The position numbers and the translations under genes were made by a program. The notes beneath the pieces were generated by a model. The model ran no database searches and was not told where the DNA came from. It saw nothing but the letters and a program-made list of their open reading frames with translations. From Macrostomum lignano (taxonomy: Eukaryota): a stretch of DNA of 64,000 nt. The stretch covers positions 62,001 to 126,000 of the forward strand of contig NIVC01001916.1 of the NCBI GenBank assembly GCA_002269645.1, read 5' to 3'. Shown here in pieces: positions 33,084 to 51,597 of this stretch; within the stretch, counting starts at the first letter, position 1; each line of letters starts with the position of its first letter.

Positions 33084-36000
33084 AGTGGCCGTGGCCTCTG
33101 CCTGCCTACCGGAGCACCTGTGCAGCCTGGCAGCAGACGCGAACACTCCGTGACCCTGCGGACAGTGGAAGTACCTTCGCCCCTCCACGGATCCGTCATT
33201 TCTGCCCACCGCGTTGTCCAGCTCCACCCCGTACCAAACTCCCGGGGCGAAGTGGCACTCGCCAACGAACCGGACGGTGCCTCGACGTTGGCCGGCTACG
33301 ATCACTCGGTCGCCGAGGGCGAAACTGTGCCGGGTTCGAACCCGGGCCTCCACGCCGCTGACGTCGATTGCGCCGCGATGGACCCGGGTGAAGCCGGACA
33401 CGCGGCTCATGGGGACCAGCACCTGGCCGGGTCGGACACGGGGTCGGACACTTAATTCCTGGACTCTTGATTCCTGATAACCAATTCTCGGACACCATTC
33501 CTGAACACTTCATTCCCGGACTCTCCTTTCCTGGACACTTCATTCTTAGACACTCCATCTTTAAACACTTCATTCCCGGACACTTCATTCCCGGACACTT
33601 CATTCCCGGACACTTCATTCCCGGACACTTCATTCCCGGACGCTTCATTCCTCCAGACATTTAATTCCCGGACAGTGCGGACACTTCATTCCCGGACACT
33701 TCATTCCCAGAATCTTCATTCCCAGACTCTCCATTTCTTCGGACGCTTTATTCCTGGAAATTTAATTCCCGGACATTTAATTCCCGGACACTTAATTCCC
33801 GGACACTTCATTCCTGGACACTTCATTCCTACGGACACTTCATTCCCGGACACTTCATTCCTAGACACTTCATTCCTAGACACTTTATCTTCAGACCCTC
33901 CATTCCCGGACACTCACCCCCGGCCAGCCGGACACTGGAAGTATCTGACTCCGGACACGCAACCGTCGTGTCGGCCAGCCTGCGGCGTCTCGAGTTCAAC
34001 TCCGGCCCAGACGCCTGGCGCGAATTCCACGGGGCCCCAGTAGCGGAGGGTGCCGGGCCGGGACCCAGCAACCAGGACTCGGTCGCCCAAGTTGGAAGGC
34101 GGCTGATCGGCTTGCTGCTGCGGTCTCTGCTGCGGCTGCCGCTGTGACTGCTGCTGCTGCTTCTGCAGTGCAGCCGCCTGATGTGTGATCAGAAGCGATA
34201 ATTAGGATGATTCTTAGGGGATAATTGGGAAGATTCTTAGGTTATAATTAGGAAGATTCTTAGGGAATAATTATGGTGATACTTAGGGGATAATTAGGGA
34301 GATTCTTAGGGGGTAATTAGGAAGATTCTTAGGGGATAATTAAGGGTGATTGCGCCTTAATTTTTGTCCTTATTGTCATTAGGGGACAATTAGGAAGATT
34401 ATTAGGGGATAATTATAGGAAGATTCTTAGGGGATAATTAGGAAGCATCTTAGGGGATAATTAGGAAGCATCTTAGGGGATAATTAGGAAGCATCTTAGG
34501 GGACAATTAGGAAGTTTATTAGGGGATAATTATAGAAAGATTCTTAGGGGATAATTAGGAAGCATCTTAGGGGATAATTAGGAAGCATCTTAGGGGACAA
34601 TTAGGAAGATTCTTAGGGGATAATTAGGGAAATTGTAAGGGGATAATTAGAGAGATACTTGGGGGTTATTTAGAGAGATTCTTAAGGGATAATTAGGGCG
34701 ATTCTTAGAGAACAGTTAGGAAGATTTTTAGGGGATAATTAGGAATATACTTAGAGGATGATTAGGAATATTATTAGGGGACAATTAGGAAGATTCTTAG
34801 GAAATAATTAGGAAGATTCTTAGGCGATGAGTAGGGAGACTCTTAGAGGATAATTGGGGGTAGAATCTTAGGGGATAACAAGGGGATAACTAGGGAGATT
34901 CTTAATACATCCAACTAAACGTGCTTCCCAGTGAAAGAAGAGGAGTGAAAGGCAAAGGCAAGGGAAGTCCAACCTCTTCAAACGCTGACGAAGCCACCGA
35001 AGCGGTTGATGAAGCGGACGACAGCGGAGCTGCAGCCGCGGCAGCCGGCACCGAAGCGGTGGACGAAGCGGACAGCCGAGGCGGTCGCTCAGGCCGACTG
35101 CCAGCCAGTAAAGTGAGCAGTCTCGATCGGATCTCTCGATTCTCAGCCGAAGAGTTCGAGTTGAACAAACCAGAGGTCAGTTGAGGCAGGCAGTCGACGG
35201 GACGCCGGAGCAACTCGTCTGTGGCTGCCAGAGCTGCCTGACCTGCGCTGGAGACCAGCAGGCGGGCGCTGCCTTCGCTCAGGTGTGCAGCGGCCAGGTG
35301 CAGCGGGGTGGCGTCTTCGAACTCGGTGCATCTGATTGTGAAAGAGGGCATGAATTGTTAAAGAGTCGGTTCTGAGTTCGAACTCTATTATGACCGTTTA
35401 CTATGAGTATGTTTGTACTTTAGTCTATGACCGGTTTCTATGAGTATGTTTCTACTTTAGTCTATGACCGGTTCTATGAGTATGTTTGTACTTTAGTCTA
35501 TGACCGGTTTCTATGAGTATGTTTGTACTTTAGTCTATGACCGGTTTACTATGAGTTTGATTGTACTTAGTCTATGAAAGGTTTCTATGAGTTTGTTTGT
35601 ACTTTAGTCTATGGCTGGTTTTTGAGTTTGTACTTTAGTCTATAGCTGTTTTCTGAGTTTATACTTTAGTCTATGGCTGTTTTCTGAGTTTGTATTTTAG
35701 TCTATGGCTGGTTTTTAAGCTTGTACTTTAGTCTATGGCTGGTGTTTGAGTTTGTACTTTAGTCTATGGCTGGTTTTTAAGCTTGTACTTTAGTCTATGG
35801 CTGGTTTCTGAGTTTGTAATTTAGTCTATGGCTGGTTTCTGAGTTTGTAATTTAGTCTATGGCTGGTTCTGAGTTTGTACTTTAGTCTATGGCTGGTTTC
35901 TGAGTTTGTACTTTAGTCTATGGCTGGTTTTTTAGTTTGTACTTTAGTCTATGGCTGTTTTCTAAGTTTGTACTTTAGTCTATGGCTGGTTTTTAAGCTT

Positions 36001-37553
36001 GTACTTTAGTCTATGGCTGGTTTTTGAGTTTGTACTTTAGTCTATGGCTGGTTTTTAAGCTTGTACTTTAGTCTATGGCTGGTTTCTGAGTTTGTAATTT
36101 AGTCTATGGCTGGTTTCTGAGTTTGTAATTTAGTCTATGGCTGGTTTCTGAGTTTGTAATTTAGTCTATGGCTGGTTTCTGAGTTTGTAATTTAGTCTAT
36201 GGCTGGTTTCTGAGTTTGTAATTTAGTCTATGGCTGGTTTCTGAGATTGTACTTTAGTCTATGGAGGTTGCCAAAGTGACCCCCACTAACCTAGCCAATG
36301 GATCAGCCCCGGCCTCTAGCAGAACTTCCACCGCCTCTTGACAGTTGAACATTGTCGCCAGGTGCAACGGGGTTACGTCTGTCCACCGACTGCGCGCCTC
36401 AGGCTGAGCCCCAGCCAAGAGAAGTCCGCGCATGGCGTTGGCCGCCGCGGAGGGACTCGCCAACGCACCGCATTTTGCCGCAAAATGAAGCTGAGCAAAG
36501 TCGGTCACCTTGATGCGGTGGCAATACAGGAAGTCAGTCTTCCTTTAAGGCGGCCGAACTATTTATAGATTTTGTTGCCAGTGGTGATTTCAGTGGGGTG
36601 CCAGGGGATTTCAGTGGGGTGTCAGGGGGTTTCAGTGGGGTGTCAGGGGGTTTCAGTGGGGTTTCAGTGGGGTGTCAGGAGGTTTCAGTGGGGTGTCAGG
36701 GGGTTTCAGTGGGGTGTCAGGGGGTTTCAATGGAGTGTCAGGGGGTTTCAATGGAGTGTCAGGGGTTTTAATGGAGTGCCAGGATGTTTCAGTGGGGTGT
36801 TAGGGGATTTCAGTGGGGTGTCAGGAGATTTCAATAGGTGTCAGGGGGTTTCAATGGAGTGCCAGGAGGTTTCAGTGCGGTGTTAGGGGATTTCAGTGGG
36901 GTGTTAGGGCATTTCAGTGGTGTTAGGGGATTTCAGTGGGTGTCAGGTGATTTCAGTGGGGTGTCAGGAGATTTTTTCAGTGGGGTATCAGGGGTGATTT
37001 CGGTGGGGTGTCAGGGGTTTAAATGGAGTGTCAGGAGGTTTCAGTGGGGTGTCAGGGGTGATTTCGGTGGGGTGTCAGGGGGTTTAAATGGAGTGTCAGG
37101 AGGTTTCATTGGGGTGTCAGGGGTGATTTCAGTGGGGTGCCAGGGGATTTCAGTGGGGTGTCAGGGGGTTTCAGTGGGTGTCAGGGGAGTAAGAAAATAC
37201 ACTGGGGTATCAGTTAGAAAAATTGAAATTATGTCAACAAGAAAGCCAGTAAAAGTACACGCTTTTCAACACAGACAAAAGCACTAAAAAGTAAGATAAA
37301 CAATATCAAATCATCGACTCACTTGATCACGATCGTTTGGTCCAACGCCTAGCTCAGCCAGACGGTCAACTATCTCAGGCAGCAGCTGCTGGGCAGGTCG
37401 GGTCCATTGGCGAATCAGGGCGAATAGCTGATTAGGAGTTGCCACCTCCAGCTGCTGGGAGCAGCCTGAGCACTGCAGATCGAATAGCTCCGCTCCAAGG
37501 GACTGGCATCTTGAGCAGAGGGGTGCCAGAACACTCTCATAGATTTGGAACTC
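32431..37553 (-). CDS. CLIP4: CLIP3/CLIP4 (CLIPR-59/RSNL2)-like protein: ankyrin repeats plus three CAP-Gly domains; first exon not found
   Basis: Exons 37553-37323, 36508-36291, 35331 to about 34974, 34177-33918, about 33422-32970 and 32670-32431. NDRDQVTDFAQLHFAAKCGA..RSRWTDVTPLHLA matches the CLIP3/4 ankyrin region, and there are three GTVRF.G..FA.GVW.GVEL....G.NDG...G.RYF.C CAP-Gly motifs. CLIP3 versus CLIP4 cannot be distinguished. The 33918/33422 junction needs either an alternative acceptor or a 1-bp homopolymer correction. Confidence 0.88.
33455..33915. repeat. 15-bp minisatellite (CCGGACACTTCATTC), CLIP intron
   Basis: Tandem periodicity. Confidence 0.93.
34200..34900. repeat. About 23-bp degenerate minisatellite (TTAGGGGATAATTAGGAAGATTC), CLIP intron
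   Basis: Tandem periodicity. Confidence 0.92.
35390..36262. repeat. About 31-bp minisatellite (TAGTCTATGGCTGGTTTCTGAGTTTGTACTT), CLIP intron; mirrored at about 48466-49338
   Basis: Tandem periodicity. Confidence 0.94.
36585..37195. repeat. GGGGTGTCAG/GTTTCAGT compound minisatellite, CLIP intron; mirrored at about 47533-48143
   Basis: Tandem periodicity. Confidence 0.93.
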
Positions 37554-38922
37554 CTGGGAATGAGGCATGCAATGAAAAAATGATCGTGAATAATGGTATT
37601 ATGAAAAAGAAATATCACAATCAATGAATCTTTATGAGAATGAAAAATGTGGAAAACATTTATCTAAATCTTATCAAAACTAGAATTGAAATTAAAGCTA
37701 GACTTTAATTAAGTAGAATAGTTAAGATAGCTTTTAGCTTTATTATAAGTTATAGACCCTGAATTACAGATTTATTAGGATTTAGGCCTATAGATTAAAA
37801 CTTTTTTGTTTATCTACGAATAATATTCAGAATGTAGAATGTTTGCATGAATAAAGTACCTACATAAATAGAGTAACAAATAAAAAAATAACTAGTATTG
37901 TTTATTCCCTAAATATTTATGTACTGACTTATTAGTTAAATAAAAATATTTATAACATCCTTATTATGCTATAAGTATAAGTATAATCTAGTCTTAGACG
38001 TGGCTATAGGCCAAGGCTTAAACAAACAGAGCTTATTTAATCAATAAATATTCATATTCATATGAGCTAAATATAATTATTTTCAATAATTTCAGTATTA
38101 TCATTATTTTAATAAATGCCTAAATGGATCCGATACTGCCAAGTGCAAGCAATGGGATTTTGAAAATGAATTCCTACAAGCAGCAACTGAGTAATACTAA
38201 TATGGTGATAGGATAGTTAGGCTGTAGCAGTCGGGAGTAGACATTTCTCTATTTTTTTCTCTAGACATTTCTCGACATTTCTCTATTTTTTCGTTTTATT
38301 TGTCTTCATATTACAAATATCACTAAACACTAGGCATTGGAGTCAGTAGATTGATTAGAAAACAAACAAAAATCACTATTGTGTCTATGTCTAAGCAGCA
38401 GCTTAGCAGTTATTCGTTAACCCAAAAAAAAACCATGCCTACGAAAAAAATTATTTCATGACTATTAGTTAAAAATAGAAGTAACAACAACAAGGCAGAA
38501 TAGTAAAAAATTTATTAATTTTTACTAAAAAAAACTAATGTACAGTTTTTTAATATTACTAACATATATACGTTGTCTTTTAGCAAATTTAAAGCATTTT
38601 ACAGCACATTTGATTTACTGTTTTATTTATTAAAAATTTTAATTACAAACTTTCTTGCCAAAGTAGTGCACTGCTTCTTATAAGTAGTATTTGACAACGA
38701 TAAATTTACTAATTATTATTATTCCTCTATTCGTCCGAAAAAGTTCAGCTTTGACAAAAATTGAAAAAGTATTTGCTTTCTACAAATCATGGCTTTTATT
38801 AACTGTTTTTATTCAAGACAAAAATTATAACCTTAACGCTCTAAAAAAATTTTGGATTTGCAAACTTTCCTACTGATAGTAGAAATATCAACATTTTCTT
38901 CTATTTTGGTTGTACTGCTAGA

Positions 38923-38992
38923 TTTCTAGAAATTTCTTGAATCAATTAAATGACACAATTTCGAGAAATTTCCCCCGGGCAGTCTTTATAAA
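38923..38992 (+). promoter_or_regulatory. Heat-shock promoter: 4-unit HSE, 3-unit HSE and TATA box
   Basis: tTTCtaGAAatTTCttGAAt (38923-38942), tTTCgaGAAatTTCc (38959-38973) and TATAAA (38987-38992), about 115 bp upstream of the sHSP ATG. Confidence 0.92.
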
Positions 38993-39107
38993 CAAGACAG
39001 GCTGCTTCTCGAACAGACAAGCTCCTAAATCAAGAAAGCGAGAGCAAAACACAAGCAAAAGCAAAGCAAGCAAACCAAACAAACCAGCAGACATTCTACA
39101 AGCGACA

Positions 39108-39905
39108 ATGTCGCTCTGGATCTCCCCCACGAACGTGTTCACGCCGTTCTCGCACGCGCTGCCGCTTGTGACAGCCATGAGCGAGCTGGACGACTGGCTG
39201 ACGCCTGAGTACGACCCGCTGGTGCACCTGTGGTGTCATCGAGGTCCGAAGCGACCGCGCCACTGGTCCCGGACTGTCGACCTTCGCGGCTTCTCGCCCA
39301 AGGACGTGTCGGTGAAGCGACAGGACCGAAAGGTGCGCGTCGTGGCTCGACTCGAGAACGGCGACGACGTGACGGAGGTGAAGCGGACGGTGGACCTGCC
39401 CGAGGAGGTGGACGCTGAGAAGCTGAGCAGCGGCTTCACCCAGGACGGCATGCTGGTGCTGAAGGCGCCGTTCAAGGAGCAGCAGCTGCAGCAGCGACAG
39501 GGTGACTCGGTGTGGGACGAGCTGCGCGGCCTGCTGCGAGGCGACCTGCAGTCCGGCCAGCTGGTGGAGGCCGACGACGGCACCAAGCGGTTCAAGGCGG
39601 AGCTGTCGGTGCGCGAGTTCAAGCCGGACGAGATTCGCATCCAGCAGCAGGGCGACCGCGTCCGAGTCGAGGCTGAGCACAAGGACGAGTCGAACGGGCA
39701 GCGGATCCACAAGCGGCTGGAGAGAGAGTTCCAGCTGCCCGCCGGCACCAAGCTGGATCAGGTGGCCAGCAAGCTCAGCCAGGACGGCCGGCTGTGCATC
39801 GAGGCGCCGTTCGAGGCTCCGCCAGCCAAGCAGCCACCGCAGATCAAGGACGTTCCCATGGAGATCGAGAACGCCGATGATCAGAGCAGGGCGATGGGCT
39901 GCTGA
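39108..39905 (+). CDS. Small heat-shock protein with two tandem alpha-crystallin domains (flatworm p40/Tsp36-like), 265 aa, intronless
   Basis: Two ACDs (VDLRGFSPKDVSV..KRTVDLPEEVDAEKLSSGFTQDGMLVLKAP; LSVREFKPDEIRI..REFQLPAGTKLDQVASKLSQDGRLCIEAP); upstream HSEs. Confidence 0.95.
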   Translation: MSLWISPTNVFTPFSHALPLVTAMSELDDWLTPEYDPLVHLWCHRGPKRPRHWSRTVDLRGFSPKDVSVKRQDRKVRVVARLENGDDVTEVKRTVDLPEEVDAEKLSSGFTQDGMLVLKAPFKEQQLQQRQGDSVWDELRGLLRGDLQSGQLVEADDGTKRFKAELSVREFKPDEIRIQQQGDRVRVEAEHKDESNGQRIHKRLEREFQLPAGTKLDQVASKLSQDGRLCIEAPFEAPPAKQPPQIKDVPMEIENADDQSRAMGC

Positions 39906-42900
39906 CAATTGCTCCAAGAATTGTTTTGTTTGTTTTCAAGATTGGTTAAACTTTTGACACGGGTTCTTGTACGTCAGTCACTTTCAGGCAGTACTAATTG
40001 TTAGCTCTTTAGGCCTGAGTACACTTAATGCGGCTTACTCAAGTTAAGCGTACAACTCATTAATTATAGTTTACACGAATTGACATTCGTTTATCTTTTG
40101 ACTCTTTCATCATGCTTTTAAACAATTTTTTGAACTATTGAACTTTTTGAACTAGGAAAAAAGTAGTAGCACGTCCTCTTTCTGCATGCCACATGTACAT
40201 GTCATGTATTTCACTTCCTCTCATGCTGATACTTTTCAATACTCTCAAATATACAGTCAAAAATTTATAGTTTAACAGTTTTTTCCGTTATTCAATCTGA
40301 CGTTTGGTGAATTACTAAAATGGCGTCTCTGACTGCAGTTGAGAAAGTTTCTAGTAAGCTGTAATTTTACGTTAGGGAAAACACCATTACAATAGAAAAG
40401 GTGATTGAGCAAAACTTTGTCACATAGAACAAACATAGACATAGTCAAACGATGGAGCAATAGGCTTGTACTTTTACCATAGATCATGTGTCGGCAAAGT
40501 TTTTTATCTGAAGGGCCAGATATACATGTAGACTTTAGCGCATAACTTTGGGCCGGAGAGAGGAGAGAAAAAAGAGAATGAATAGAGGAGAAAAGAGAAG
40601 ATGGAAGAGAGAGGACAGATGAGAGAGAAGAATGGAGAGGAGAGCAGAGAGGGGAGATGAGGAGAGATAGGAAGGGAGAGACGCAATTGACGAGCAGAGG
40701 GGAGATCAGGAGAAAGTGGAGAGAAGGAGAGAGAGAGGGGAGAGAATAGCAAAGAGATCGAGGTGAGATTAGGGGAGAGGAGAAAATAATAGAGATTAGA
40801 GAAAAGACAAAGAGCGGGCGGATTGTGCAGTTGTGAGCAGTAGCCATCATAGGAAGAGACTACTGTTGTGAGCCCCGTCCTCCGGAGCGACGCCTACAGC
40901 TGAACCCTGTTGGGAAGCTGCGACCCCTAGGTCCCCAGTTAGAGCTCCCGTCCCGCGCCCTGAGGAGAAGCAGGAAAAAGGTCAGAAAAGAACTCACGAG
41001 CTTCCGTGCAAAACCGATGCAGTTCGCACTTGTGATGGTAGACAAGAAGTTTGTCTGTCTGTCTATGGCGAATCTGATATATTGAACTTAATGTTTCAAT
41101 CTCTATGGCGAATCTGATATATTGAACTTAATGTTTCAATCTCTATGGCGAATCTGATATATCGATCTGAATACTTCAGTGTCTTTTTTGGCCATTGTTT
41201 AACGATGCAACATACTAGACAATCTATCATTTGCTGAGATGCTGATGCTCAAGGAGGAGTTGCTGAGATGCCAAGCGTCAAGTGGGCATGGGCTTTTATG
41301 CGGAGGCTCAAAGGGGAAGTTGAGGATACTCATATCTTAGAGTATTTGCTTTAAACATCTTTCCTTTACACAAGCTAACAATATAGTGATCGTCAGGGAC
41401 TACTCAAACATCGAGACGGGAAACTAGGCAAATCATGGCGAAGTTTTTACGAGGCTGGTTAAATCTATGGCCGCGCCAATGCAGCAGTAGCTATTTCAAT
41501 ATTTCAATAAATCTTCAATAAATTTTATATTTTATTATATCTGTGAATTTTAATATTCAGGTGCTTTTATAACTGTGTACATTTACTTGAAAGTTTATTG
41601 GAAAAATAGTTCATAAAACATATAAGGTAACATTGAGGGCTATTTGTAAGGGGTGAATAGTGAACATGGAACAGACGAACAATAAAAAGTTAACTCACAC
41701 AGAGGATGTGAGCATTAAAATATGTGAAGTTTGAACATATATATATACAGACGGGAAAATGAACAGATGCGAAAAAATATTTAACAGATTTAAGCATTGA
41801 ATAGTCGGGAATACTCAGTAGATGTGAACTTGTTCGGCAGGGCTCTCGTTTGAGAGTAGGTTCTGGTTTAGGCCAGGGGTTAGGAGTCTTCTCCGTGGTC
41901 GTGTTCGGTTCCTTTTCCTCTTCTTCTCAGCTGAGATCTGCTTGCCAGTTGCGTAATCTAATTATTATTATTAACTGTTATTGTCGTTTTGTCAACTCTA
42001 GTTATCTGCGCCGCTTTGAATTTAAATATTGTAACTTGAAGTAATCAAATTAAATCGTCTAGCCAATTATCAGTTTGTATCACATAGGATTATCACTCTC
42101 TAAATCTTTCGGTTTGTGTTCCCTCGTGTTCTTTCTTTTCTTGTACTGTACCTGCGGCTATTGGAGAAGACTGGTAGGACTCGCCGACCGGCGATAGGCA
42201 ATTAGGATTAATAGCTTTAAAATCTTCGAACGCTCCAAGTAGGTTTGTCTAGGGCCTAATTAATTGCTCACCGTGCATGCTATTTATCTAATTGCCTTAT
42301 TTTATCACATCCGATTAGTGGGGGCTCTGCGCCCACACCCCCGCAAGGGAGCTGCGCTCCCTTGACCCTGCTCCCTGCCGAGCCAATATCTATGGCACGA
42401 AGACACTGCAGCGTTACTTAATGGCGTGGCTTAATGGCGTTACATAATGATCAACCGTAAACGCTAGTCTATATGATAATGCGATTATGTCTATGCTTTC
42501 AAACTTGGATAATGGTCACAGTCACGAGTGGCGAAGTCACGAGTGACTGCTGATCATTATTTAATTCTGAAATCACAGACTTAATCTAACATTATTTTAT
42601 AGCAGTTTCGGCAGAGTTTCTGGCAGACGCGTAGGACAAGCTCGATTTTGCCAAGAAAGTGCAGCGTTGTTGGCTGCAAGTCAAATTACGAGTCCGAACG
42701 ATTAGCTACGAAAGTCCATCTGTTTCCGAAGGACTCGGTTGAGCGAGAGCGATGGAAAAGGCCCTGCCGAACGAAGAGCAACAAGCACATTCTTTAAGGG
42801 ACTTGTCCGGAGATCATCGAAGGTGGCTCCATCATCCGTCACCTTTCAAGAGAGAAAGACAAAAAAACTTAGAAGTGCGTGACATTGCGGAACAGACAAG

Positions 42901-44823
42901 TTCACATCTACTGAGTATTCCCGACTATTCAATGCTTAAATCTGTTAAATATTTTTTCGCATCTGTTCATTTTCCCGTCTGTATATATATATGTTCAAAC
43001 TTCACATATTTTAATGCTCACATCCTCTGTGTGAGTTAACTTTTTATTGTTCGTCTGTTCCATGTTCACTATTCACCCCTTACAAATAGCCCTCAATGTT
43101 ACCTTATATGTTTTATGAACTATTTTTCCAATAAACTTTCAAGTAAATGTACACAGTTATAAAAGCACCTGAATATTAAAATTCACAGATATAATAAAAT
43201 ATAAAATTTATTGAAGATTTATTGAAATATTGAAATAGCTACTGCTGCATTGGCGCGGCCATAGATTTAACCAGCCTCGTAAAAACTTCGCCATGATTTG
43301 CCTAGTTTCCCGTCTCGATGTTTGAGTAGTCCCTGACGATCACTATATTGTTAGCTTGTGTAAAGGAAAGATGTTTAAAGCAAATACTCTAAGATATGAG
43401 TATCCTCAACTTCCCCTTTGAGCCTCCGCATAAAAGCCCATGCCCACTTGACGCTTGGCATCTCAGCAACTCCTCCTTGAGCATCAGCATCTCAGCAAAT
43501 GATAGATTGTCTAGTATGTTGCATCGTTAAACAATGGCCAAAAAAGACACTGAAGTATTCAGATCGATATATCAGATTCGCCATAGAGATTGAAACATTA
43601 AGTTCAATATATCAGATTCGCCATAGAGATTGAAACATTAAGTTCAATATATCAGATTCGCCATAGACAGACAGACAAACTTCTTGTCTACCATCACAAG
43701 TGCGAACTGCATCGGTTTTGCACGGAAGCTCGTGAGTTCTTTTCTGACCTTTTTCCTGCTTCTCCTCAGGGCGCGGGACGGGAGCTCTAACTGGGGACCT
43801 AGGGGTCGCAGCTTCCCAACAGGGTTCAGCTGTAGGCGTCGCTCCGGAGGACGGGGCTCACAACAGTAGTCTCTTCCTATGATGGCTACTGCTCACAACT
43901 GCACAATCCGCCCGCTCTTTGTCTTTTCTCTAATCTCTATTATTTTCTCCTCTCCCCTAATCTCACCTCGATCTCTTTGCTATTCTCTCCCCTCTCTCTC
44001 TCCTTCTCTCCACTTTCTCCTGATCTCCCCTCTGCTCGTCAATTGCGTCTCTCCCTTCCTATCTCTCCTCATCTCCCCTCTCTGCTCTCCTCTCCATTCT
44101 TCTCTCTCATCTGTCCTCTCTCTTCCATCTTCTCTTTTCTCCTCTATTCATTCTCTTTTTTCTCTCCTCTCTCCGGCCCAAAGTTATGCGCTAAAGTCTA
44201 CATGTATATCTGGCCCTTCAGATAAAAAACTTTGCCGACACATGATCTATGGTAAAAGTACAAGCCTATTGCTCCATCGTTTGACTATGTCTATGTTTGT
44301 TCTATGTGACAAAGTTTTGCTCAATCACCTTTTCTATTGTAATGGTGTTTTCCCTAACGTAAAATTACAGCTTACTAGAAACTTTCTCAACTGCAGTCAG
44401 AGACGCCATTTTAGTAATTCACCAAACGTCAGATTGAATAACGGAAAAAACTGTTAAACTATAAATTTTTGACTGTATATTTGAGAGTATTGAAAAGTAT
44501 CAGCATGAGAGGAAGTGAAATACATGACATGTACATGTGGCATGCAGAAAGAGGACGTGCTACTACTTTTTTCCTAGTTCAAAAAGTTCAATAGTTCAAA
44601 AAATTGTTTAAAAGCATGATGAAAGAGTCAAAAGATAAACGAATGTCAATTCGTGTAAACTATAATTAATGAGTTGTACGCTTAACTTGAGTAAGCCGCA
44701 TTAAGTGTACTCAGGCCTAAAGAGCTAACAATTAGTACTGCCTGAAAGTGACTGACGTACAAGAACCCGTGTCAAAAGTTTAACCAATCTTGAAAACAAA
44801 CAAAACAATTCTTGGAGCAATTG

Positions 44824-45621
44824 TCAGCAGCCCATCGCCCTGCTCTGATCATCGGCGTTCTCGATCTCCATGGGAACGTCCTTGATCTGCGGTGGCTGCT
44901 TGGCTGGCGGAGCCTCGAACGGCGCCTCGATGCACAGCCGGCCGTCCTGGCTGAGCTTGCTGGCCACCTGATCCAGCTTGGTGCCGGCGGGCAGCTGGAA
45001 CTCTCTCTCCAGCCGCTTGTGGATCCGCTGCCCGTTCGACTCGTCCTTGTGCTCAGCCTCGACTCGGACGCGGTCGCCCTGCTGCTGGATGCGAATCTCG
45101 TCCGGCTTGAACTCGCGCACCGACAGCTCCGCCTTGAACCGCTTGGTGCCGTCGTCGGCCTCCACCAGCTGGCCGGACTGCAGGTCGCCTCGCAGCAGGC
45201 CGCGCAGCTCGTCCCACACCGAGTCACCCTGTCGCTGCTGCAGCTGCTGCTCCTTGAACGGCGCCTTCAGCACCAGCATGCCGTCCTGGGTGAAGCCGCT
45301 GCTCAGCTTCTCAGCGTCCACCTCCTCGGGCAGGTCCACCGTCCGCTTCACCTCCGTCACGTCGTCGCCGTTCTCGAGTCGAGCCACGACGCGCACCTTT
45401 CGGTCCTGTCGCTTCACCGACACGTCCTTGGGCGAGAAGCCGCGAAGGTCGACAGTCCGGGACCAGTGGCGCGGTCGCTTCGGACCTCGATGACACCACA
45501 GGTGCACCAGCGGGTCGTACTCAGGCGTCAGCCAGTCGTCCAGCTCGCTCATGGCTGTCACAAGCGGCAGCGCGTGCGAGAACGGCGTGAACACGTTCGT
45601 GGGGGAGATCCAGAGCGACAT
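44824..45621 (-). CDS. Second, protein-identical copy of the double-ACD small heat-shock protein (265 aa)
   Basis: The ORF-track translation is identical to that of 39108-39905. Confidence 0.95.
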   Translation of the reverse strand: MSLWISPTNVFTPFSHALPLVTAMSELDDWLTPEYDPLVHLWCHRGPKRPRHWSRTVDLRGFSPKDVSVKRQDRKVRVVARLENGDDVTEVKRTVDLPEEVDAEKLSSGFTQDGMLVLKAPFKEQQLQQRQGDSVWDELRGLLRGDLQSGQLVEADDGTKRFKAELSVREFKPDEIRIQQQGDRVRVEAEHKDESNGQRIHKRLEREFQLPAGTKLDQVASKLSQDGRLCIEAPFEAPPAKQPPQIKDVPMEIENADDQSRAMGC

Positions 45622-45736
45622 TGTCGCTTGTAGAATGTCTGCTGGTTTGTTTGGTTTGCTTGCTTTGCTTTTGCTTGTGTTTTGCTCTCGCTTTCTTGAT
45701 TTAGGAGCTTGTCTGTTCGAGAAGCAGCCTGTCTTG

Positions 45737-45805
45737 TTTATAAAGACTGCCCGGGGAAATTTCTCGAAATTGTGTCATTTAATTGATTCAAGAAATTTCT
45801 AGAAA
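45737..45805 (-). promoter_or_regulatory. Mirrored HSE + TATA promoter of the second sHSP copy
   Basis: TTCaaGAAatTTCtaGAA at 45786-45805; TATAAA on the minus strand at 45737-45742. Confidence 0.9.
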
Positions 45806-47174
45806 TCTAGCAGTACAACCAAAATAGAAGAAAATGTTGATATTTCTACTATCAGTAGGAAAGTTTGCAAATCCAAAATTTTTTTAGAGCGTTAAGGTTA
45901 TAATTTTTGTCTTGAATAAAAACAGTTAATAAAAGCCATGATTTGTAGAAAGCAAATACTTTTTCAATTTTTGTCAAAGCTGAACTTTTTCGGACGAATA
46001 GAGGAATAATAATAATTAGTAAATTTATCGTTGTCAAATACTACTTATAAGAAGCAGTGCACTACTTTGGCAAGAAAGTTTGTAATTAAAATTTTTAATA
46101 AATAAAACAGTAAATCAAATGTGCTGTAAAATGCTTTAAATTTGCTAAAAGACAACGTATATATGTTAGTAATATTAAAAAACTGTACATTAGTTTTTTT
46201 TAGTAAAAATTAATAAATTTTTTACTATTCTGCCTTGTTGTTGTTACTTCTATTTTTAACTAATAGTCATGAAATAATTTTTTTCGTAGGCATGGTTTTT
46301 TTTTGGGTTAACGAATAACTGCTAAGCTGCTGCTTAGACATAGACACAATAGTGATTTTTGTTTGTTTTCTAATCAATCTACTGACTCCAATGCCTAGTG
46401 TTTAGTGATATTTGTAATATGAAGACAAATAAAACGAAAAAATAGAGAAATGTCGAGAAATGTCTAGAGAAAAAAATAGAGAAATGTCTACTCCCGACTG
46501 CTACAGCCTAACTATCCTATCACCATATTAGTATTACTCAGTTGCTGCTTGTAGGAATTCATTTTCAAAATCCCATTGCTTGCACTTGGCAGTATCGGAT
46601 CCATTTAGGCATTTATTAAAATAATGATAATACTGAAATTATTGAAAATAATTATATTTAGCTCATATGAATATGAATATTTATTGATTAAATAAGCTCT
46701 GTTTGTTTAAGCCTTGGCCTATAGCCACGTCTAAGACTAGATTATACTTATACTTATAGCATAATAAGGATGTTATAAATATTTTTATTTAACTAATAAG
46801 TCAGTACATAAATATTTAGGGAATAAACAATACTAGTTATTTTTTTATTTGTTACTCTATTTATGTAGGTACTTTATTCATGCAAACATTCTACATTCTG
46901 AATATTATTCGTAGATAAACAAAAAAGTTTTAATCTATAGGCCTAAATCCTAATAAATCTGTAATTCAGGGTCTATAACTTATAATAAAGCTAAAAGCTA
47001 TCTTAACTATTCTACTTAATTAAAGTCTAGCTTTAATTTCAATTCTAGTTTTGATAAGATTTAGATAAATGTTTTCCACATTTTTCATTCTCATAAAGAT
47101 TCATTGATTGTGATATTTCTTTTTCATAATACCATTATTCACGATCATTTTTTCATTGCATGCCTCATTCCCAG

Positions 47175-49619
47175 GAGTTCCAAATCTATGAGAGTGTTCT
47201 GGCACCCCTCTGCTCAAGATGCCAGTCCCTTGGAGCGGAGCTATTCGATCTGCAGTGCTCAGGCTGCTCCCAGCAGCTGGAGGTGGCAACTCCTAATCAG
47301 CTATTCGCCCTGATTCGCCAATGGACCCGACCTGCCCAGCAGCTGCTGCCTGAGATAGTTGACCGTCTGGCTGAGCTAGGCGTTGGACCAAACGATCGTG
47401 ATCAAGTGAGTCGATGATTTGATATTGTTTATCTTACTTTTTAGTGCTTTTGTCTGTGTTGAAAAGCGTGTACTTTTACTGGCTTTCTTGTTGACATAAT
47501 TTCAATTTTTCTAACTGATACCCCAGTGTATTTTCTTACTCCCCTGACACCCACTGAAACCCCCTGACACCCCACTGAAATCCCCTGGCACCCCACTGAA
47601 ATCACCCCTGACACCCCAATGAAACCTCCTGACACTCCATTTAAACCCCCTGACACCCCACCGAAATCACCCCTGACACCCCACTGAAACCTCCTGACAC
47701 TCCATTTAAACCCCTGACACCCCACCGAAATCACCCCTGATACCCCACTGAAAAAATCTCCTGACACCCCACTGAAATCACCTGACACCCACTGAAATCC
47801 CCTAACACCACTGAAATGCCCTAACACCCCACTGAAATCCCCTAACACCGCACTGAAACCTCCTGGCACTCCATTGAAACCCCCTGACACCTATTGAAAT
47901 CTCCTGACACCCCACTGAAATCCCCTAACACCCCACTGAAACATCCTGGCACTCCATTAAAACCCCTGACACTCCATTGAAACCCCCTGACACTCCATTG
48001 AAACCCCCTGACACCCCACTGAAACCCCCTGACACCCCACTGAAACCTCCTGACACCCCACTGAAACCCCACTGAAACCCCCTGACACCCCACTGAAACC
48101 CCCTGACACCCCACTGAAATCCCCTGGCACCCCACTGAAATCACCACTGGCAACAAAATCTATAAATAGTTCGGCCGCCTTAAAGGAAGACTGACTTCCT
48201 GTATTGCCACCGCATCAAGGTGACCGACTTTGCTCAGCTTCATTTTGCGGCAAAATGCGGTGCGTTGGCGAGTCCCTCCGCGGCGGCCAACGCCATGCGC
48301 GGACTTCTCTTGGCTGGGGCTCAGCCTGAGGCGCGCAGTCGGTGGACAGACGTAACCCCGTTGCACCTGGCGACAATGTTCAACTGTCAAGAGGCGGTGG
48401 AAGTTCTGCTAGAGGCCGGGGCTGATCCATTGGCTAGGTTAGTGGGGGTCACTTTGGCAACCTCCATAGACTAAAGTACAATCTCAGAAACCAGCCATAG
48501 ACTAAATTACAAACTCAGAAACCAGCCATAGACTAAATTACAAACTCAGAAACCAGCCATAGACTAAATTACAAACTCAGAAACCAGCCATAGACTAAAT
48601 TACAAACTCAGAAACCAGCCATAGACTAAATTACAAACTCAGAAACCAGCCATAGACTAAAGTACAAGCTTAAAAACCAGCCATAGACTAAAGTACAAAC
48701 TCAAAAACCAGCCATAGACTAAAGTACAAGCTTAAAAACCAGCCATAGACTAAAGTACAAACTTAGAAAACAGCCATAGACTAAAGTACAAACTAAAAAA
48801 CCAGCCATAGACTAAAGTACAAACTCAGAAACCAGCCATAGACTAAAGTACAAACTCAGAACCAGCCATAGACTAAATTACAAACTCAGAAACCAGCCAT
48901 AGACTAAATTACAAACTCAGAAACCAGCCATAGACTAAAGTACAAGCTTAAAAACCAGCCATAGACTAAAGTACAAACTCAAACACCAGCCATAGACTAA
49001 AGTACAAGCTTAAAAACCAGCCATAGACTAAAATACAAACTCAGAAAACAGCCATAGACTAAAGTATAAACTCAGAAAACAGCTATAGACTAAAGTACAA
49101 ACTCAAAAACCAGCCATAGACTAAAGTACAAACAAACTCATAGAAACCTTTCATAGACTAAGTACAATCAAACTCATAGTAAACCGGTCATAGACTAAAG
49201 TACAAACATACTCATAGAAACCGGTCATAGACTAAAGTACAAACATACTCATAGAACCGGTCATAGACTAAAGTAGAAACATACTCATAGAAACCGGTCA
49301 TAGACTAAAGTACAAACATACTCATAGTAAACGGTCATAATAGAGTTCGAACTCAGAACCGACTCTTTAACAATTCATGCCCTCTTTCACAATCAGATGC
49401 ACCGAGTTCGAAGACGCCACCCCGCTGCACCTGGCCGCTGCACACCTGAGCGAAGGCAGCGCCCGCCTGCTGGTCTCCAGCGCAGGTCAGGCAGCTCTGG
49501 CAGCCACAGACGAGTTGCTCCGGCGTCCCGTCGACTGCCTGCCTCAACTGACCTCTGGTTTGTTCAATATTGGACGAGCATGCTATAGAGCTTTCCCGAA
49601 ACCATTTTTAATCCAGTAA
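47175..49619 (+). pseudogene. 3'-truncated duplicate of the CLIP3/4-like gene (ankyrin part only, novel tail IGRACYRAFPKPFLIQ*)
   Basis: Exons 47175-47405, 48220-48437 and 49397-49567 are identical to the left copy; the arm ends mid-exon and the frame runs into unique sequence to a stop at 49619; AATAAA at 49738. Confidence 0.8.
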
Positions 49620-50614
49620 ATGCACATTAGAACCTGGCAGTTTATTCCTATCAGTATTTACGAGTACTTCATTTTACTCCAGATAATTTATGAACACGCT
49701 GTTTTACCACATTTTCCGTACGCTGTATGCGTATTTAAATAAACACTGTAATACATTCAACTTTGCTGATTTTTTGTTTTTAATGTATACATCTGTCAGG
49801 AATTTTTTTGGTCTCTTTTCAAGATTTCAAAACTGTCTTTACGCATCTGCCAGTTAAAACGGAGACAAAATCAACAAAAAACGGTGTCTGTTAGTTATTA
49901 CAGAACTGCACGATTCTGCACGATGCTCAGCCGCCTTGGTCGCCGATCTTGATGGCAGGTCTCCACCACCGCCCGGAACAACGCCGTCCTCACGACCTCA
50001 CAACGCGGTCACCTCAGACTGCACAAAATGACAGCCTCGATGTCGTCCGGCAAGCAGAGGGCGACATTCTGTGTGTTGACCTGACGCTGGGTACGTGTCC
50101 TTGACGGTTGAGGACAGCAACATCAGATGGCTGACACTCGAAAATAGGAGACAAGACAAACAACTCGTCTTACACATGTGTGTCTTGAATCAATGCGGAC
50201 AAAAGGCAATTCTTTTTCGCTGTTGAACAATTACTTTTTGGCAGATGCAGAAGGCGACATTTTGAGTAGGCTCAACAGTTTTCTTAGAAACGAACAATTT
50301 CAAAGGCATCTGAGAGCTACACAATTGTTGCGAAACTTTTTTTGATGCTAATTAAAGCAAACAAGGATGAAAAGGAAGTTTTTTCTGTGAGCAAAACTTG
50401 AAACTGTCTAACAAGTTGACGCCACCTCAAGACCATCTTATCCAAATTTTCAGCATATGCCTCTCCACCTCTCTTAAGCTGCAGAGTGGAGACGCGTAGG
50501 TCTCACTTGATATGATGCGTGCACGATAGACATCGCTCAAATTAGATTGAGAACAAAAATTTTAAATGAGTCATGCCGTGAATGACATCACGTTGTATTG
50601 TCGTCACGTTGAAA

Positions 50615-51255
50615 CACCTCCCTCATCTCCCTTCCTCTCTCCCTCATCTCCCTCCCTCTCTCCCTCATCTCCCTCCCTCTCTCCCTCATCTCCCTTCCTC
50701 TCTCCCTCATCTCCCTCCCTCTCTCCCTCATCTCCCTCCCTCTCTCCCTCATCTCCCTTCCTCTCTACCTCATCTCCCTCCCTCTCTCCCTCATCTCCCT
50801 CCCTCTCTCCCTCATCTCCCTCCCTCTCTCCCTCATCTCCCTCCCTCTCTCCCTCATCTCCCTTCCTCTCTACCTCATCTCCCTCCCTCTCTCCCTCATC
50901 TCCCTCCCTCTCTCCCTCATCTCCCTCCCTCTCTCCCTCATCTCCCTCCCTCTCTCCCTCATCTCCCTTCCTCTCTACCTCATCTCCCTCCCTCTCTCCC
51001 TCATCTCCCTCCCTCTCTCCCTCATCTCCCTTCCTCTCTACCTCATCTCCCTCCCTCTCTCCCTCATCTCCCTTCCTCTCTACCTCATCTCCCTCCCTCT
51101 CTCCCTCATCTCCCTCCCTCTCTCCCTCATCTCCCTTCCTCTCTACCTCATCTCCCTCCCTCTCTCCCTCATCTCCCTTCCTCTCTACCTCATCTCCCTC
51201 CCTCTCTCCCTCATCTCCCTTCCTCTCTCCCTCATCTCCCTTCTCTCTTCTTCAT
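50615..51255. repeat. 21-bp pyrimidine-rich minisatellite (CTCCCTCATCTCCCTCCCTCT), about 30 copies
   Basis: Tandem periodicity; explains the SPSSPSL/LPHLPPS ORFs. Confidence 0.96.
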
Positions 51256-51597
51256 CTCCCTCCCTCATTTCATGCCGTCATTCATACAAAGAAAAGAAAA
51301 GTTGAATCCAAAAGATTTTACGCCAAGACTGCAGCCCTCCTTTACTCCCACGATTCAGGGAAACTTGGGCTATTTCCTTCATTCCAGGCAGTCTCTGATT
51401 TTAATGATCGACCCAGCCAAGCCATCCTTGCCATTCGCCAAGCATCCCTTTCCTGACTGGCTGGAGACGGAGGAACCCAAGCCTAGAGAGGATTCAGCAC
51501 CTCCCCTCGCTTTACTTAAACGCTGCTGATTTCACATGCAGCCGGGAAAAATTCTGCAAACACATGAGAACAGCTTTTAGACTGAAAAGAGTTAACA

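What the first reader, a model, noticed from the sequence alone, without database searches (positions are those of the whole stretch)
35161..49567. 14.4-kb near-perfect palindrome doubling a heat-shock gene
Seen: arms of 6673 and 6672 bp around a 1062-bp spacer. The only difference I noticed is one homopolymer base, even through the unstable minisatellites. The palindrome places two identical HSE-driven sHSP genes tail-to-tail about 4.9 kb apart. Inference: either a very recent inverted duplication that raises sHSP dosage, or arm-to-arm gene conversion as in Y-chromosome palindromes. Heat-induced read-through could form long hairpin dsRNA and endo-siRNAs. An assembly or amplification fold-back artefact is an equally serious alternative.
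Basis: partly seen in the sequence, partly recalled or inferred. Interest (0 to 1): 0.7.

Follow-up and report, generated by a model that had tools for sequence, protein, structure and literature searches.

The report
Young palindromic duplication doubling flatworm sHSP
A 6.7-kb block of the flatworm Macrostomum lignano genome, holding a heat-shock-promoter-driven small heat-shock gene and most of a neighbouring gene, has been copied in reverse 1 kb downstream. This is an ordinary kind of young inverted duplication, and it resembles the known palindromic hsp-16 locus of C. elegans.

Summary
The arms are 35161-41833 and 42896-49567, the spacer is a unique 1,062 bp, and the only difference is one C in a homopolymer.

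The window is Macrostomum lignano assembly Mlig_3_7, contig NIVC01001916.1 (window position + 62,000). Each arm carries:
- exons 1-3 of an ankyrin/CAP-Gly gene;
- an AT-rich intergenic region;
- an intact, unannotated, intronless sHSP gene with two alpha-crystallin domains, behind a classical 4-unit + 3-unit HSE/TATA promoter;
- 1.9 kb of 3' flank.

The left arm is parental. Its outer edge cuts exon 3 of the ankyrin gene, which continues into the left flank to its CAP-Gly exon. The right copy is truncated and is annotated as a separate gene.

Two homeologous contigs carry a single, decayed, promoter-less sHSP fragment and no palindrome. They differ from the window by 2.3-2.5% in the sHSP, against zero substitutions between the arms. 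The duplication is therefore young, unless the arms have been homogenised.

The right outer junction sits on a 3-nt (8 of 10) microhomology. The inner left boundary sits on a 12-nt inverted repeat. Both fit replicative template switching.

There is a unique spacer, unique flanks, and the outer junction also appears in a gene model that is not in this assembly's GenBank annotation. It is not excluded, because no reads could be checked. This is a new member of a known kind.

The parts
35161..41833 (.). Left (parental) arm of the palindrome, 6,673 nt
   Evidence: It is parental because exon 3 of the ankyrin/CAP-Gly gene runs uninterrupted across 35160/35161.
41834..42895 (.). Unique 1,062-bp spacer
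   Evidence: It has no other copy in the window and is not an eroded palindrome.
42896..49567 (.). Right (derived) arm, 6,672 nt, the reverse complement of the left arm
   Evidence: Searches show one homopolymer base of difference.
39108..39905 (+). sHSP gene, left copy: intronless, 265 aa, two HSP20/alpha-crystallin domains
   Evidence: Pfam PF00011 matches in 2 stretches, E 2e-25. The best PDB match is 2BOL over both domains. dN/dS is 0.35-0.43 against paralogues. It is not annotated in the GenBank record.
44824..45621 (-). sHSP gene, right copy, identical coding sequence
38923..38993 (+). Heat-shock promoter of the left copy: 4-unit HSE 38923-38942, 3-unit HSE 38959-38973, TATAAA 38988-38993
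   Evidence: The same 4+3 HSE layout sits upstream of the paralogues in L001 and L004.
45736..45805 (-). Mirror-image heat-shock promoter of the right copy
38972..38976 (+). C5 homopolymer (C4, read as G4, at 45753-45756 in the right arm): the only difference between the arms
33917..37568 (-). Parental ankyrin/CAP-Gly gene (BOX15_Mlig019130g1, P0123). Exons: 37565-37320, 36505-36290, 35330-34974 (crosses the arm boundary) and 34177-33917 (CAP-Gly, outside the arm).
   Evidence: CAP_GLY matches residues 303-360 with E 2.5e-20.
47163..49619 (+). Truncated copy of the ankyrin gene (BOX15_Mlig016211g1, P0003, 227 aa). Exons: 47163-47408, 48223-48438 and 49398-49616. After the junction it reads 16 new residues (IGRACYRAFPKPFLIQ) and stops. 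It has no CAP-Gly domain.
49558..49570 (.). Right outer junction (49567/49568), on a microhomology. The window reads GTTTGTTCAA|TAT and both homeologs read GTGTGTCCAA|TAT: 8 of 10 bases match and the last 3 are identical.
41832..41843 (.). 12-nt perfect inverted repeat GTTCGGCAGGGC straddling the inner left boundary; its partner is at 42761-42772 in the spacer
   Evidence: One of 5,000 shuffles reached this.
42652..42790 (+). Fragment of a THAP zinc-finger domain (first half only) in the spacer
   Evidence: PF05485, E 6e-6. No second half was found anywhere in the window.

Best explanation
This is a young inverted segmental duplication in the Macrostomum lignano DV1 genome (contig NIVC01001916.1, about 97,161-111,567).

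The copied block is 6.67 kb. It holds exons 1-3 of an ankyrin/CAP-Gly gene, the shared AT-rich intergenic region, a complete HSE/TATA-driven two-domain sHSP gene and 1.9 kb of its 3' flank. The block was copied in reverse orientation and placed 1,062 bp downstream of itself.

Shown:
- the structure itself;
- the left arm is parental and the right arm derived;
- the right copy truncates the ankyrin gene;
- both sHSP copies keep an intact reading frame and the full promoter;
- two homeologous loci carry only one decayed sHSP and no palindrome.

Inferred: the copy arose in one replication-based event with two template switches. A strand copying the right flank leftwards left its template at a 3-nt (8 of 10) microhomology with ankyrin exon 3. 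It copied the block up to a 12-nt inverted repeat, where it stalled. It then returned to the original template next to where it had left. No transposon is involved.

The arms are identical because the event is recent: under about 2% of the age of the homeolog split, if no conversion has occurred.

Expected consequences: two heat-inducible copies of the only intact member of this sHSP homeolog group, and a new truncated ankyrin gene.
For: - Structure.
- Identity of the window with Mlig_3_7 contig NIVC01001916.1.
- Polarity: exon 3 of P0123 crosses 35160/35161 and continues to a CAP-Gly exon in the left flank, while the right copy stops 16 codons after 49567.
- Orientation in relatives: in homeologs L012 and L013 the sHSP sense strand reads towards the sequence that starts at window 49568, as the left copy does.
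- Age: there are no substitutions in 6,672 nt between the arms, against 18-20 mismatches in about 800 nt of sHSP and 4-5% in the adjacent flank against the homeologs.
- Mechanism: junction microhomology; a 12-nt inverted repeat at the inner boundary, reached by 1 of 5,000 shuffles; no target-site duplication, no terminal repeats and no further copies.
- Reality of the junction: a 121-aa UniProt gene model (P0124, UniRef100_A0A1I8GEY8) that is not in the Mlig_3_7 GenBank annotation ends ...LTSGLFN|IGRACYRAFPKPFLIQ, so it spans 49567/49568.
- Against a simple fold-back artefact: a unique 1,062-bp spacer, no N in the window, and the palindrome lies inside a 222-kb contig.
- Function of the sHSP: two HSP20 domains, best PDB match 2BOL, dN/dS 0.35-0.43, and HSEs in the same layout as the experimentally heat-inducible paralogue Mlig-hsp20/Mlig005128.
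Against: - No sequencing read was inspected.
- Mlig_3_7 and the older ML2 assembly were built from the same PacBio data set, so the second gene model is independent in assembler but not in reads.
- The annotation is genome-guided and allows multi-mapping reads. The separate 'gene' for the truncated copy is therefore weak evidence.
- Perfect identity through about 1.5 kb of minisatellite is also what an artefact would give, or read correction that erases small differences (the latter is my knowledge of Canu).
- The inner right junction (42895/42896) shows no clear microhomology, and the ancestral spacer-flank adjacency could not be demonstrated. The 77-78 nt that the homeologs have in that place show no significant similarity to the spacer.
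- Heat induction of this particular sHSP has not been shown, and it is absent from the GenBank annotation.
Confidence: 0.7

Rival explanations
1. The palindrome is old, and its arms are kept identical by arm-to-arm gene conversion, as in the C. elegans hsp-16 locus and the Y-chromosome palindromes. Selection would then favour two co-evolving heat-shock gene copies.
For: The arms are identical even in introns and minisatellites. A close precedent exists: the C. elegans hsp-16 palindrome has 100% identical arms and a 414-bp spacer, and its structure is conserved in C. remanei (PMC1803023). Identity between the window and its homeologs is mosaic, which shows that conversion or recombination acts in this region.
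Against: Neither homeologous locus has the palindrome or a second sHSP. Arm non-coding GC (0.28-0.39) is not raised above the spacer (0.445), so there is no sign of GC-biased conversion. The duplicated unit ends inside a coding exon of an unrelated gene, which looks accidental rather than selected. Keeping 1.5 kb of minisatellite identical would need very frequent conversion.
Confidence: 0.1
2. The palindrome is an assembly or library artefact. The inverted copy would then come from chimeric molecules or from a mis-join and would not exist in the worm's genome.
For: The arms are perfectly identical, and the single difference is a homopolymer indel, a common residual error in assemblies of this type (my knowledge). 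REAPR scored only 64% of Mlig_3_7 bases as error-free and found 872 coverage errors within contigs. Both assemblies share one PacBio data set. Exact look-ups of ORFs that span the junctions in public read assemblies found nothing, but neither did the control ORF.
Against: A missed-adapter or fold-back read gives arms that meet with no spacer and usually lies at a contig end. Here there is a unique 1,062-bp spacer, and unique flanks extend at least 35 kb on the left and at least 14 kb on the right within the window. Mixing an inversion haplotype with the standard one cannot produce the spacer|right-arm junction. The right arm is identical to the left arm, not to the homeologs' sHSP (about 97.5%, no promoter), so it was not borrowed from them. 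No assembler joins contigs on a 3-10 nt overlap, so the junctions must be present in reads. At about 130x coverage a single chimeric read should not win, and the outer junction also appears in a gene model that is not in the Mlig_3_7 GenBank annotation.
Confidence: 0.15
3. A transposon made the duplication, for example by aberrant or alternative transposition of an element in the spacer. The THAP fragment there could be a relic of a P-element-like transposase.
For: The spacer holds the first half of a THAP domain.
Against: The spacer and the palindrome have no terminal inverted repeats and no target-site duplication. The THAP fragment is frameshifted and incomplete. There are no other copies in the window.
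Confidence: 0.04

Closest known systems
C. elegans hsp-16 locus (hsp-16.1/16.48 pair duplicated as a 3.8-kb inverted repeat; Russnak & Candido 1985, as described in PMC1803023)
   Same: Small heat-shock genes with HSE promoters lie in a palindrome with 100% identical arms around a short unique spacer (414 bp there, 1,062 bp here). The inner genes are convergent. The same question arises of recent duplication against gene conversion.
   Different: The arms here are 3.5 times longer and also carry part of an unrelated gene, which the arm boundary truncates. The nematode structure is conserved between species. Here two homeologous loci lack it, so conservation is not shown.
Human and ape Y-chromosome palindromes (P1-P8), maintained by arm-to-arm gene conversion (Rozen et al. 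2003, cited in PMC1803023)
   Same: Near-identical inverted arms around a unique spacer, with paired gene copies.
   Different: This one is orders of magnitude smaller. There is no evidence of long-term maintenance, no sign of GC-biased conversion, and no known link to a sex chromosome or a non-recombining region.
Inverted duplications made by replication-based template switching or fold-back (FoSTeS/MMBIR; U-turns of restarted forks at short inverted repeats in yeast). This comparison rests on my knowledge.
   Same: The copy is inverted and lies close to its source with a short spacer. One junction has a 3-nt microhomology and one boundary lies at a short inverted repeat. There are no transposon hallmarks.
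   Different: The partner of the 12-nt repeat lies 123 nt away from the actual inner right junction, so the simplest one-step fold-back model does not fit exactly. The mechanism is inferred from sequence alone.
Flatworm sHSPs with two alpha-crystallin domains (PDB 2BOL, which I know as Taenia saginata Tsp36; the schistosome p40 antigen family) and M. lignano Mlig-hsp20 (Mlig005128)
   Same: The protein has two HSP20 domains in one chain. It is 64% identical to Mlig005128, whose promoter was shown to be heat-inducible (PMC6371448) and has the same HSE layout.
   Different: This is a distinct, unannotated paralogue. Its heat induction is untested, and it has no canonical poly(A) hexamer within 1.6 kb of the stop, unlike Mlig005128.

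Membership tests
Palindromic (inverted) segmental duplication | Two long arms in inverted orientation with near-identical sequence | tested here: met
   The arms are 6,673 and 6,672 nt with one indel.
Palindromic (inverted) segmental duplication | Unique spacer and unique outer flanks, meaning it is not a dispersed repeat or transposon | tested here: met
   Self-BLAST of the spacer, flanks and arms found only minisatellite cross-hits outside the palindrome.
Palindromic (inverted) segmental duplication | Present in the organism's DNA, with both novel junctions supported by independent molecules | not testable with these tools
   No reads were available. The indirect support is that the outer junction is present in gene model P0124, which is not in the Mlig_3_7 GenBank annotation. 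Both assemblies used the same PacBio data.
Palindrome maintained by gene conversion (hsp-16 or Y-chromosome type) | Structure shared by related loci or species whose sequences have diverged | tested here: not met
   Homeologous contigs L012 and L013 carry one decayed sHSP and no palindrome. The paralogous Mlig-hsp20 loci L001-L003 have no palindrome around the gene. Other species and lines could not be examined.
Palindrome maintained by gene conversion (hsp-16 or Y-chromosome type) | GC enrichment of the arms relative to spacer and flanks, from biased conversion | tested here: not met
   Arm non-coding GC is 0.28-0.39 against 0.445 in the spacer. This is a weak test at this scale.
HSF-regulated heat-shock promoter | At least 3 contiguous alternating nGAAn/nTTCn units close to a TATA box and the start codon | tested here: met
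   A 4-unit and a 3-unit perfect HSE lie 15-70 bp upstream of TATAAA and 135-185 bp upstream of the ATG. The window holds 9 perfect 3-unit matches against 0.5 expected.
HSF-regulated heat-shock promoter | Transcript induced by heat | not testable with these tools
   There are no expression data for this copy. Heat induction was shown only for the paralogue Mlig005128.
Two-domain flatworm sHSP (Tsp36/p40 type) | Two alpha-crystallin (HSP20) domains in one polypeptide | tested here: met
   PF00011 matches in 2 stretches. The alignment to 2BOL covers query residues 56-235, that is both domains.
Fold-back sequencing or assembly artefact (missed SMRTbell adapter, amplification chimera) | Arms meet with no spacer or only adapter sequence, and the palindrome runs to a contig end | tested here: not met
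   The spacer is 1,062 bp of unique sequence that includes a THAP fragment. Unique flanks extend at least 35 kb and 14 kb inside a 222-kb contig.
Fold-back sequencing or assembly artefact (missed SMRTbell adapter, amplification chimera) | Junctions supported by one or very few chimeric reads, with half depth on the arms | not testable with these tools
   No read data were available. Look-ups of ORFs that span the junctions were uninformative because the control ORF was also not found.
Transposon-borne inverted repeat (foldback or TIR element) | Target-site duplication at the outer ends, and multiple copies | tested here: not met
   The flanks read ...GAGTTCGAG| and |TATTGGACG, with no direct repeat. 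There is no further copy in the window.

The most novel reading that the evidence does not exclude
The palindrome is not a passing accident. It would be a maintained structure that keeps two co-converting copies of the only functional member of this sHSP homeolog group, since both homeologs have lost the promoter. That would make palindromic sHSP loci a recurrent solution that arose independently in flatworms and nematodes. A further possibility is that heat-induced read-through across the centre produces a hairpin RNA that feeds back on the gene.
Probability: 0.1. Interest if true: 0.6.

Novelty: new member of a known kind. Interest (0 to 1): 0.33.

Why it matters
If real, the locus gives M. 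lignano, a transgenic flatworm model whose Hsp20 promoter is already used as a heat sensor, two identical and unannotated heat-shock-type sHSP genes. It also gives a truncated ankyrin gene that the current annotation treats as an independent gene. This matters for qPCR, RNAi and CRISPR design and for expression counting, because reads multi-map to both arms.

The locus is also a clean, datable example of an inverted duplication, with junction signatures and two homeologous outgroups. Together with the IR-flanked inverted block on a homeolog, it suggests that this neighbourhood is prone to inverted rearrangements.

It does not open a new kind of biology. Palindromic heat-shock gene pairs are known from C. 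elegans (hsp-16) and, from my knowledge, from the Drosophila hsp70 locus.

Tried and rejected
- **Exact-protein look-ups.** I looked up the sHSP, ORFs spanning the inner right junction and the outer right junction, and a control ORF across the left boundary in public assemblies. None is on record, including the control, so the result is uninformative.
- **Synteny with the Mlig-hsp20 loci L001-L003.** Only the coding sequence is conserved. The shared element at 62817-63048 is a non-coding, SINE-like dispersed repeat. The roughly 50-nt match at 55959-56005 is too short to use.
- **Is the 77-78 nt that the homeologs have between their sHSP and the flank a remnant of the spacer?** Local and spliced alignments are no better than shuffles: 42 of 300 and 26 of 200 shuffles scored as high. 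Only an anchored GAACAG hexamer is shared, so the ancestral spacer-flank adjacency stays an inference.
- **Second half of the THAP domain** in the right flank, which would have shown that the copy was inserted into a THAP gene: not found.
- **Spacer as an eroded palindrome centre; homology between the two outer flanks:** none.
- **One-step fold-back at the 12-nt inverted repeat.** The predicted junction is 123 nt away from the real one, so the simple model was rejected in favour of a stall at that repeat.
- **RNA genes:** Rfam and tRNA scans of the window found nothing.
- **Simple tree of the three homeologs to polarise the arrangement.** Identity is mosaic, so no single tree holds.
- **Literature.** The original genome paper (Wasik et al. 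2015) is not held, so I could not check whether the PacBio library was amplification-free. I found no literature on palindromes in M. lignano.


Full report
**1. The observation**

- The left arm is 35161-41833 (6,673 nt) and the right arm is 42896-49567 (6,672 nt).
- The spacer, 41834-42895, is 1,062 bp.
- The arms are exact reverse complements apart from one base in a C-run: C5 at 38972-38976 against four at 45753-45756.
- Because of this, the minisatellite arrays in the arms are identical too: 37/31-bp units at 35389-36264 and 21-bp units at 36576-37187.
- The spacer and both flanks have no other copy in the window and no residual symmetry.
- This is the only large inverted repeat in the 64 kb.

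**2. Where the window comes from**

A neighbouring gene led to contig NIVC01001916.1 of Macrostomum lignano assembly GCA_002269645.1 (Mlig_3_7). Its positions 99,163-121,619 are 100.000% identical to window 37163-59619. The window is therefore this contig, with window position + 62,000 giving the contig position.

Mlig_3_7 is a Canu 1.4 assembly of published PacBio data at about 130x coverage, polished with Pilon. The older ML2 assembly used the same PacBio data (PMC5730564). The DV1 line has extra large chromosomes, the assembly holds 180 Mb of duplicated non-repetitive blocks at least 95% identical, and M. lignano is a hidden polyploid (abstract of PMC10468722).

**3. What each arm contains**

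Reading the left arm from its outer end:

(a) *Part of an ankyrin/CAP-Gly gene on the minus strand.* These are exons 3 (part), 2 and 1 of BOX15_Mlig019130g1 (P0123).
- The exons are 37565-37320, 36505-36290, 35330-34974 and 34177-33917.
- The last exon encodes the CAP-Gly domain (E 2.5e-20) and lies outside the palindrome.
- The two minisatellites sit in its introns.

(b) *A 1.5-kb intergenic region* with 28% GC.

(c) *An intronless 265-codon gene on the plus strand*, 39108-39905, with 66% GC.
- It has two HSP20/alpha-crystallin domains.
- Its best solved-structure match is 2BOL, across both domains. I know 2BOL as the two-domain tapeworm sHSP Tsp36.
- It is 64% identical to M. lignano Mlig005128. 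That gene is Mlig-hsp20, whose promoter was shown to respond to heat (PMC6371448).
- dN/dS against two paralogues is 0.35-0.43.

(d) *1.9 kb of 3' flank.*

The promoter is a textbook heat-shock promoter. It has a perfect 4-unit HSE (38923-38942), a perfect 3-unit HSE (38959-38973) and a TATAAA (38988-38993), with the ATG at 39108. The window holds 9 perfect 3-unit matches against 0.5 expected. Both paralogue promoters have the same 4+3 layout. The single base that differs between the arms lies between the proximal HSE and the TATA box.

The GenBank annotation does not include this sHSP. That annotation was filtered to remove transcripts overlapping repeat annotations and transcripts with identical coding sequences.

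**4. Which arm is the original**

The left outer boundary (35160/35161) falls inside exon 3 of the ankyrin gene, at residue 211/212.
- In the left context the reading frame continues and is spliced to the CAP-Gly exon.
- In the right context it reads 16 new codons (IGRACYRAFPKPFLIQ) and stops.
- The right copy is annotated as a separate 227-aa 'partial' gene, BOX15_Mlig016211g1 (P0003).

The left arm is therefore parental and the right arm is the copy. The two novel junctions are 42895/42896 and 49567/49568.

**5. Homeologous loci as outgroups**

The right-flank gene Mlig017751 (window 57958-58996) is also encoded on two other contigs of the same assembly:
- NIVC01000169.1, fetched as L012;
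- NIVC01001895.1, fetched as L013.

Both match the window's right flank at 95-100% identity, in a mosaic pattern. Both share one arrangement:
- the sequence that starts at window 49558-49568, in inverted orientation;
- then 77-78 nt of unrelated sequence;
- then a single sHSP-derived segment, equivalent to window 39070-39874 plus 38871-38927;
- then about 750 nt of unrelated sequence;
- then the flank from window 51588 onwards.

Their sHSP copies are decayed:
- a 142-nt deletion removes both HSEs and the TATA box;
- the C-terminus is replaced;
- L012 has a 27-nt in-frame deletion;
- L013 is frameshifted.

Neither 21-kb locus has the palindrome or the ankyrin gene.

Three things follow.
- *Orientation.* In the homeologs the sHSP sense strand points towards the 49568 flank, as the left copy does. 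This again marks the left copy as the original orientation.
- *Age.* The arms differ by no substitution in 6,672 nt. The window's sHSP differs from the homeologs by 18-20 substitutions in about 800 nt, and the adjacent flank differs by 4-5%. With at most about 3 differences compatible with observing none, the duplication, or the last homogenisation, is younger than roughly 2% of the homeolog divergence. This is my inference.
- *Source of the right arm.* It was not borrowed from a homeolog by the assembler, because it is identical to the left arm and has the promoter that the homeologs lack.

**6. Junction anatomy**

- *Right outer junction.* Homology between the window and the homeologs begins exactly at this junction. 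The homeologs read ...GAACAGTGTGTCCAA|TATTGGACGAGC and the window reads ...CTCTGGTTTGTTCAA|TATTGGACGAGC. The last 10 nt match at 8 positions (about 4e-4 by chance, my calculation) and the last 3 are identical.
- *Inner left boundary.* It sits 2 nt inside a perfect 12-nt inverted repeat, GTTCGGCAGGGC at 41832-41843, whose partner is at 42761-42772 in the spacer. Only 1 of 5,000 shuffles of the spacer gave such a repeat straddling the boundary.
- *No transposon hallmarks.* There is no target-site duplication and there are no terminal repeats.

These features fit a replication-based event with two template switches. A strand copying the right flank leftwards slips onto ankyrin exon 3 at the microhomology. 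It copies the block rightwards until it stalls at the short inverted repeat. It then returns to its original template next to where it left.

This is an inference with gaps.
- A one-step fold-back at the 12-nt repeat does not fit, because the real junction is 123 nt away.
- The inner right junction has no clear microhomology.
- The ancestral adjacency of spacer and flank could not be shown. The homeologs' 77-78 nt are not detectably related to the spacer, apart from a shared GAACAG next to the junction.

**7. Real or artefact**

*Against an artefact:*
- A missed-adapter or fold-back read gives arms that abut and usually sits at a contig end. Here the spacer is a unique 1,062 bp and even contains a THAP-domain fragment.
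- The palindrome lies deep inside a 222-kb gap-free contig.
- Mixing an inversion haplotype with the standard one cannot create the spacer|right-arm junction.
- Assemblers do not join sequences on 3-10 nt, so both junctions must exist in reads.
- A 121-aa UniProt gene model (P0124, UniRef100_A0A1I8GEY8, two entries) ends with the junction-specific peptide ...LTSGLFN|IGRACYRAFPKPFLIQ. It is not part of the Mlig_3_7 GenBank annotation. From its accession series I take it to come from the ML2 assembly.

*For caution:*
- ML2 and Mlig_3_7 share their PacBio reads.
- The annotation is genome-guided and allows multi-mapping.
- REAPR flagged many errors in the assembly.
- Read correction can erase small differences between near-identical repeats (my knowledge), so 'perfect' identity may be somewhat overstated.
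- My look-ups of ORFs spanning the junctions in public read assemblies were uninformative.

I put the artefact at about 0.15.

**8. Recent duplication or maintained palindrome**

The closest precedent is the C. elegans hsp-16 locus. It is a palindrome of small heat-shock genes with 100% identical arms and a 414-bp spacer. Its structure is conserved in C. remanei and is thought to be maintained by gene conversion (PMC1803023).

Here I find no support for such maintenance.
- The homeologs lack the structure.
- The arms are not GC-enriched.
- The arm boundary cuts an unrelated gene, as an accident would.

I therefore favour a recent event (0.7) over maintenance (0.1).

**9. Likely consequences**

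Both sHSP copies keep the complete promoter and reading frame, so both should be heat-inducible. This is an inference. They are the only intact members of this homeolog group in the loci I could see.

The two genes converge 4,918 bp apart. No AATAAA or ATTAAA occurs for 1.6 kb after the stop, whereas the Mlig-hsp20 paralogue has such hexamers at +216, +298 and +318. Long 3' ends are therefore possible. A hairpin RNA would still need transcription through a further 330 nt of arm, the spacer and into the other arm, and nothing here tests that.

The truncated ankyrin copy lacks CAP-Gly. Whether it is expressed as such is unknown.

**10. Verdict**

The structure is most likely a real, young inverted segmental duplication formed by template switching. 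It doubles a heat-shock-type sHSP gene as a by-product, together with part of a neighbouring gene. It is a new member of a known kind and of modest interest. Its main value is practical, for annotation and experimental design in this model flatworm, and as a clean example with outgroups.

Noticed in passing
window 56200-56400 (+): There is a second heat-shock-type promoter in the right flank. It has three perfect 3-unit HSEs (56200-56214, 56269-56283, 56346-56360), a TATA-like ATATAAATA at about 56388, and an A/C-rich leader that resembles the sHSP 5' UTR. No hsp-like ORF follows. The next annotated gene is Mlig017751 at 57958-58996, which has no Pfam domain. The target could be a non-coding transcript or that gene. 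The region is 99.8% conserved on homeolog L012.
   Followed up: partly
window 42652-42790 (+), in the spacer: This stretch encodes the N-terminal half of a THAP zinc-finger domain (PF05485, E 6e-6, above the gathering score). A 1-nt frameshift in an A-run breaks it, and no second half exists anywhere in the window. It is probably a gene or transposase relic.
   Followed up: partly
window 41832-41843 and 42761-42772: A perfect 12-nt inverted repeat has one arm straddling the inner left boundary of the palindrome (1 of 5,000 shuffles). The same CCCTGCCGA motif occurs again at 42373-42381.
   Followed up: partly
L012 (NIVC01000169.1:622254-643292) 1-3717: A 146-nt, 97% inverted repeat (1-146 and 3572-3717) flanks the 3.4-kb block that holds the decayed sHSP. 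The left copy is cut by the end of the fetched locus, so it may be the inner edge of a larger palindrome on this homeolog. Relative to the window, the block from 49568 to about 51590 is inverted.
   Followed up: partly
L012 1985-2823 and L013 1519-2400: The homeologous sHSP copies are pseudogene-like. A shared 142-nt deletion removes the HSEs and the TATA box, and a shared replaced C-terminus reads IQKAAE*. L012 has a private 27-nt deletion and L013 has a frameshift.
   Followed up: yes
window 49568-60983 against L012 and L013: Identity to the homeologs is mosaic. Against L012 it is 95-97% at 49568-53620 and 99.7-100% at 55000-60980. L013 is 99.8% identical at 50000-50600 and 92-99% elsewhere. 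This suggests exchange between homeologs, or mixing of haplotypes in the assembly.
   Followed up: no
window 39906-41505: No AATAAA or ATTAAA occurs for 1.6 kb downstream of the sHSP stop codon. There is only an AATATA at +343. The heat-inducible paralogue Mlig005128 has canonical hexamers at +216, +298 and +318.
   Followed up: partly
window 39108-39905 and 44824-45621: The intact two-domain sHSP gene is missing from the GenBank annotation of Mlig_3_7. Searches of 5.8 billion proteins returned no identical entry.
   Followed up: yes
window 62817-63048; L001 20655-20838; L003 13870-14068: A non-coding element that looks SINE-like by eye also lies near the Mlig-hsp20 loci, at varying distances. 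It is a dispersed repeat and not a synteny marker.
   Followed up: partly
window 53626-53794, 54337-54505, 54805-54980, 55130-55411: A unit of about 170 bp is repeated several times in the right flank. It has an open frame reading ...CNSNQQRTRVRSCSCVTTAVATPSTEASQTD... The repeat is also present on the homeologs.
   Followed up: no
L001 (NIVC01001104.1) 16083-17742: Another short-spacer inverted repeat (655-nt arms, 99% identical, 350-nt spacer) lies 5 kb downstream of one Mlig-hsp20 copy. It is absent from the two sister loci L002 and L003.
   Followed up: no
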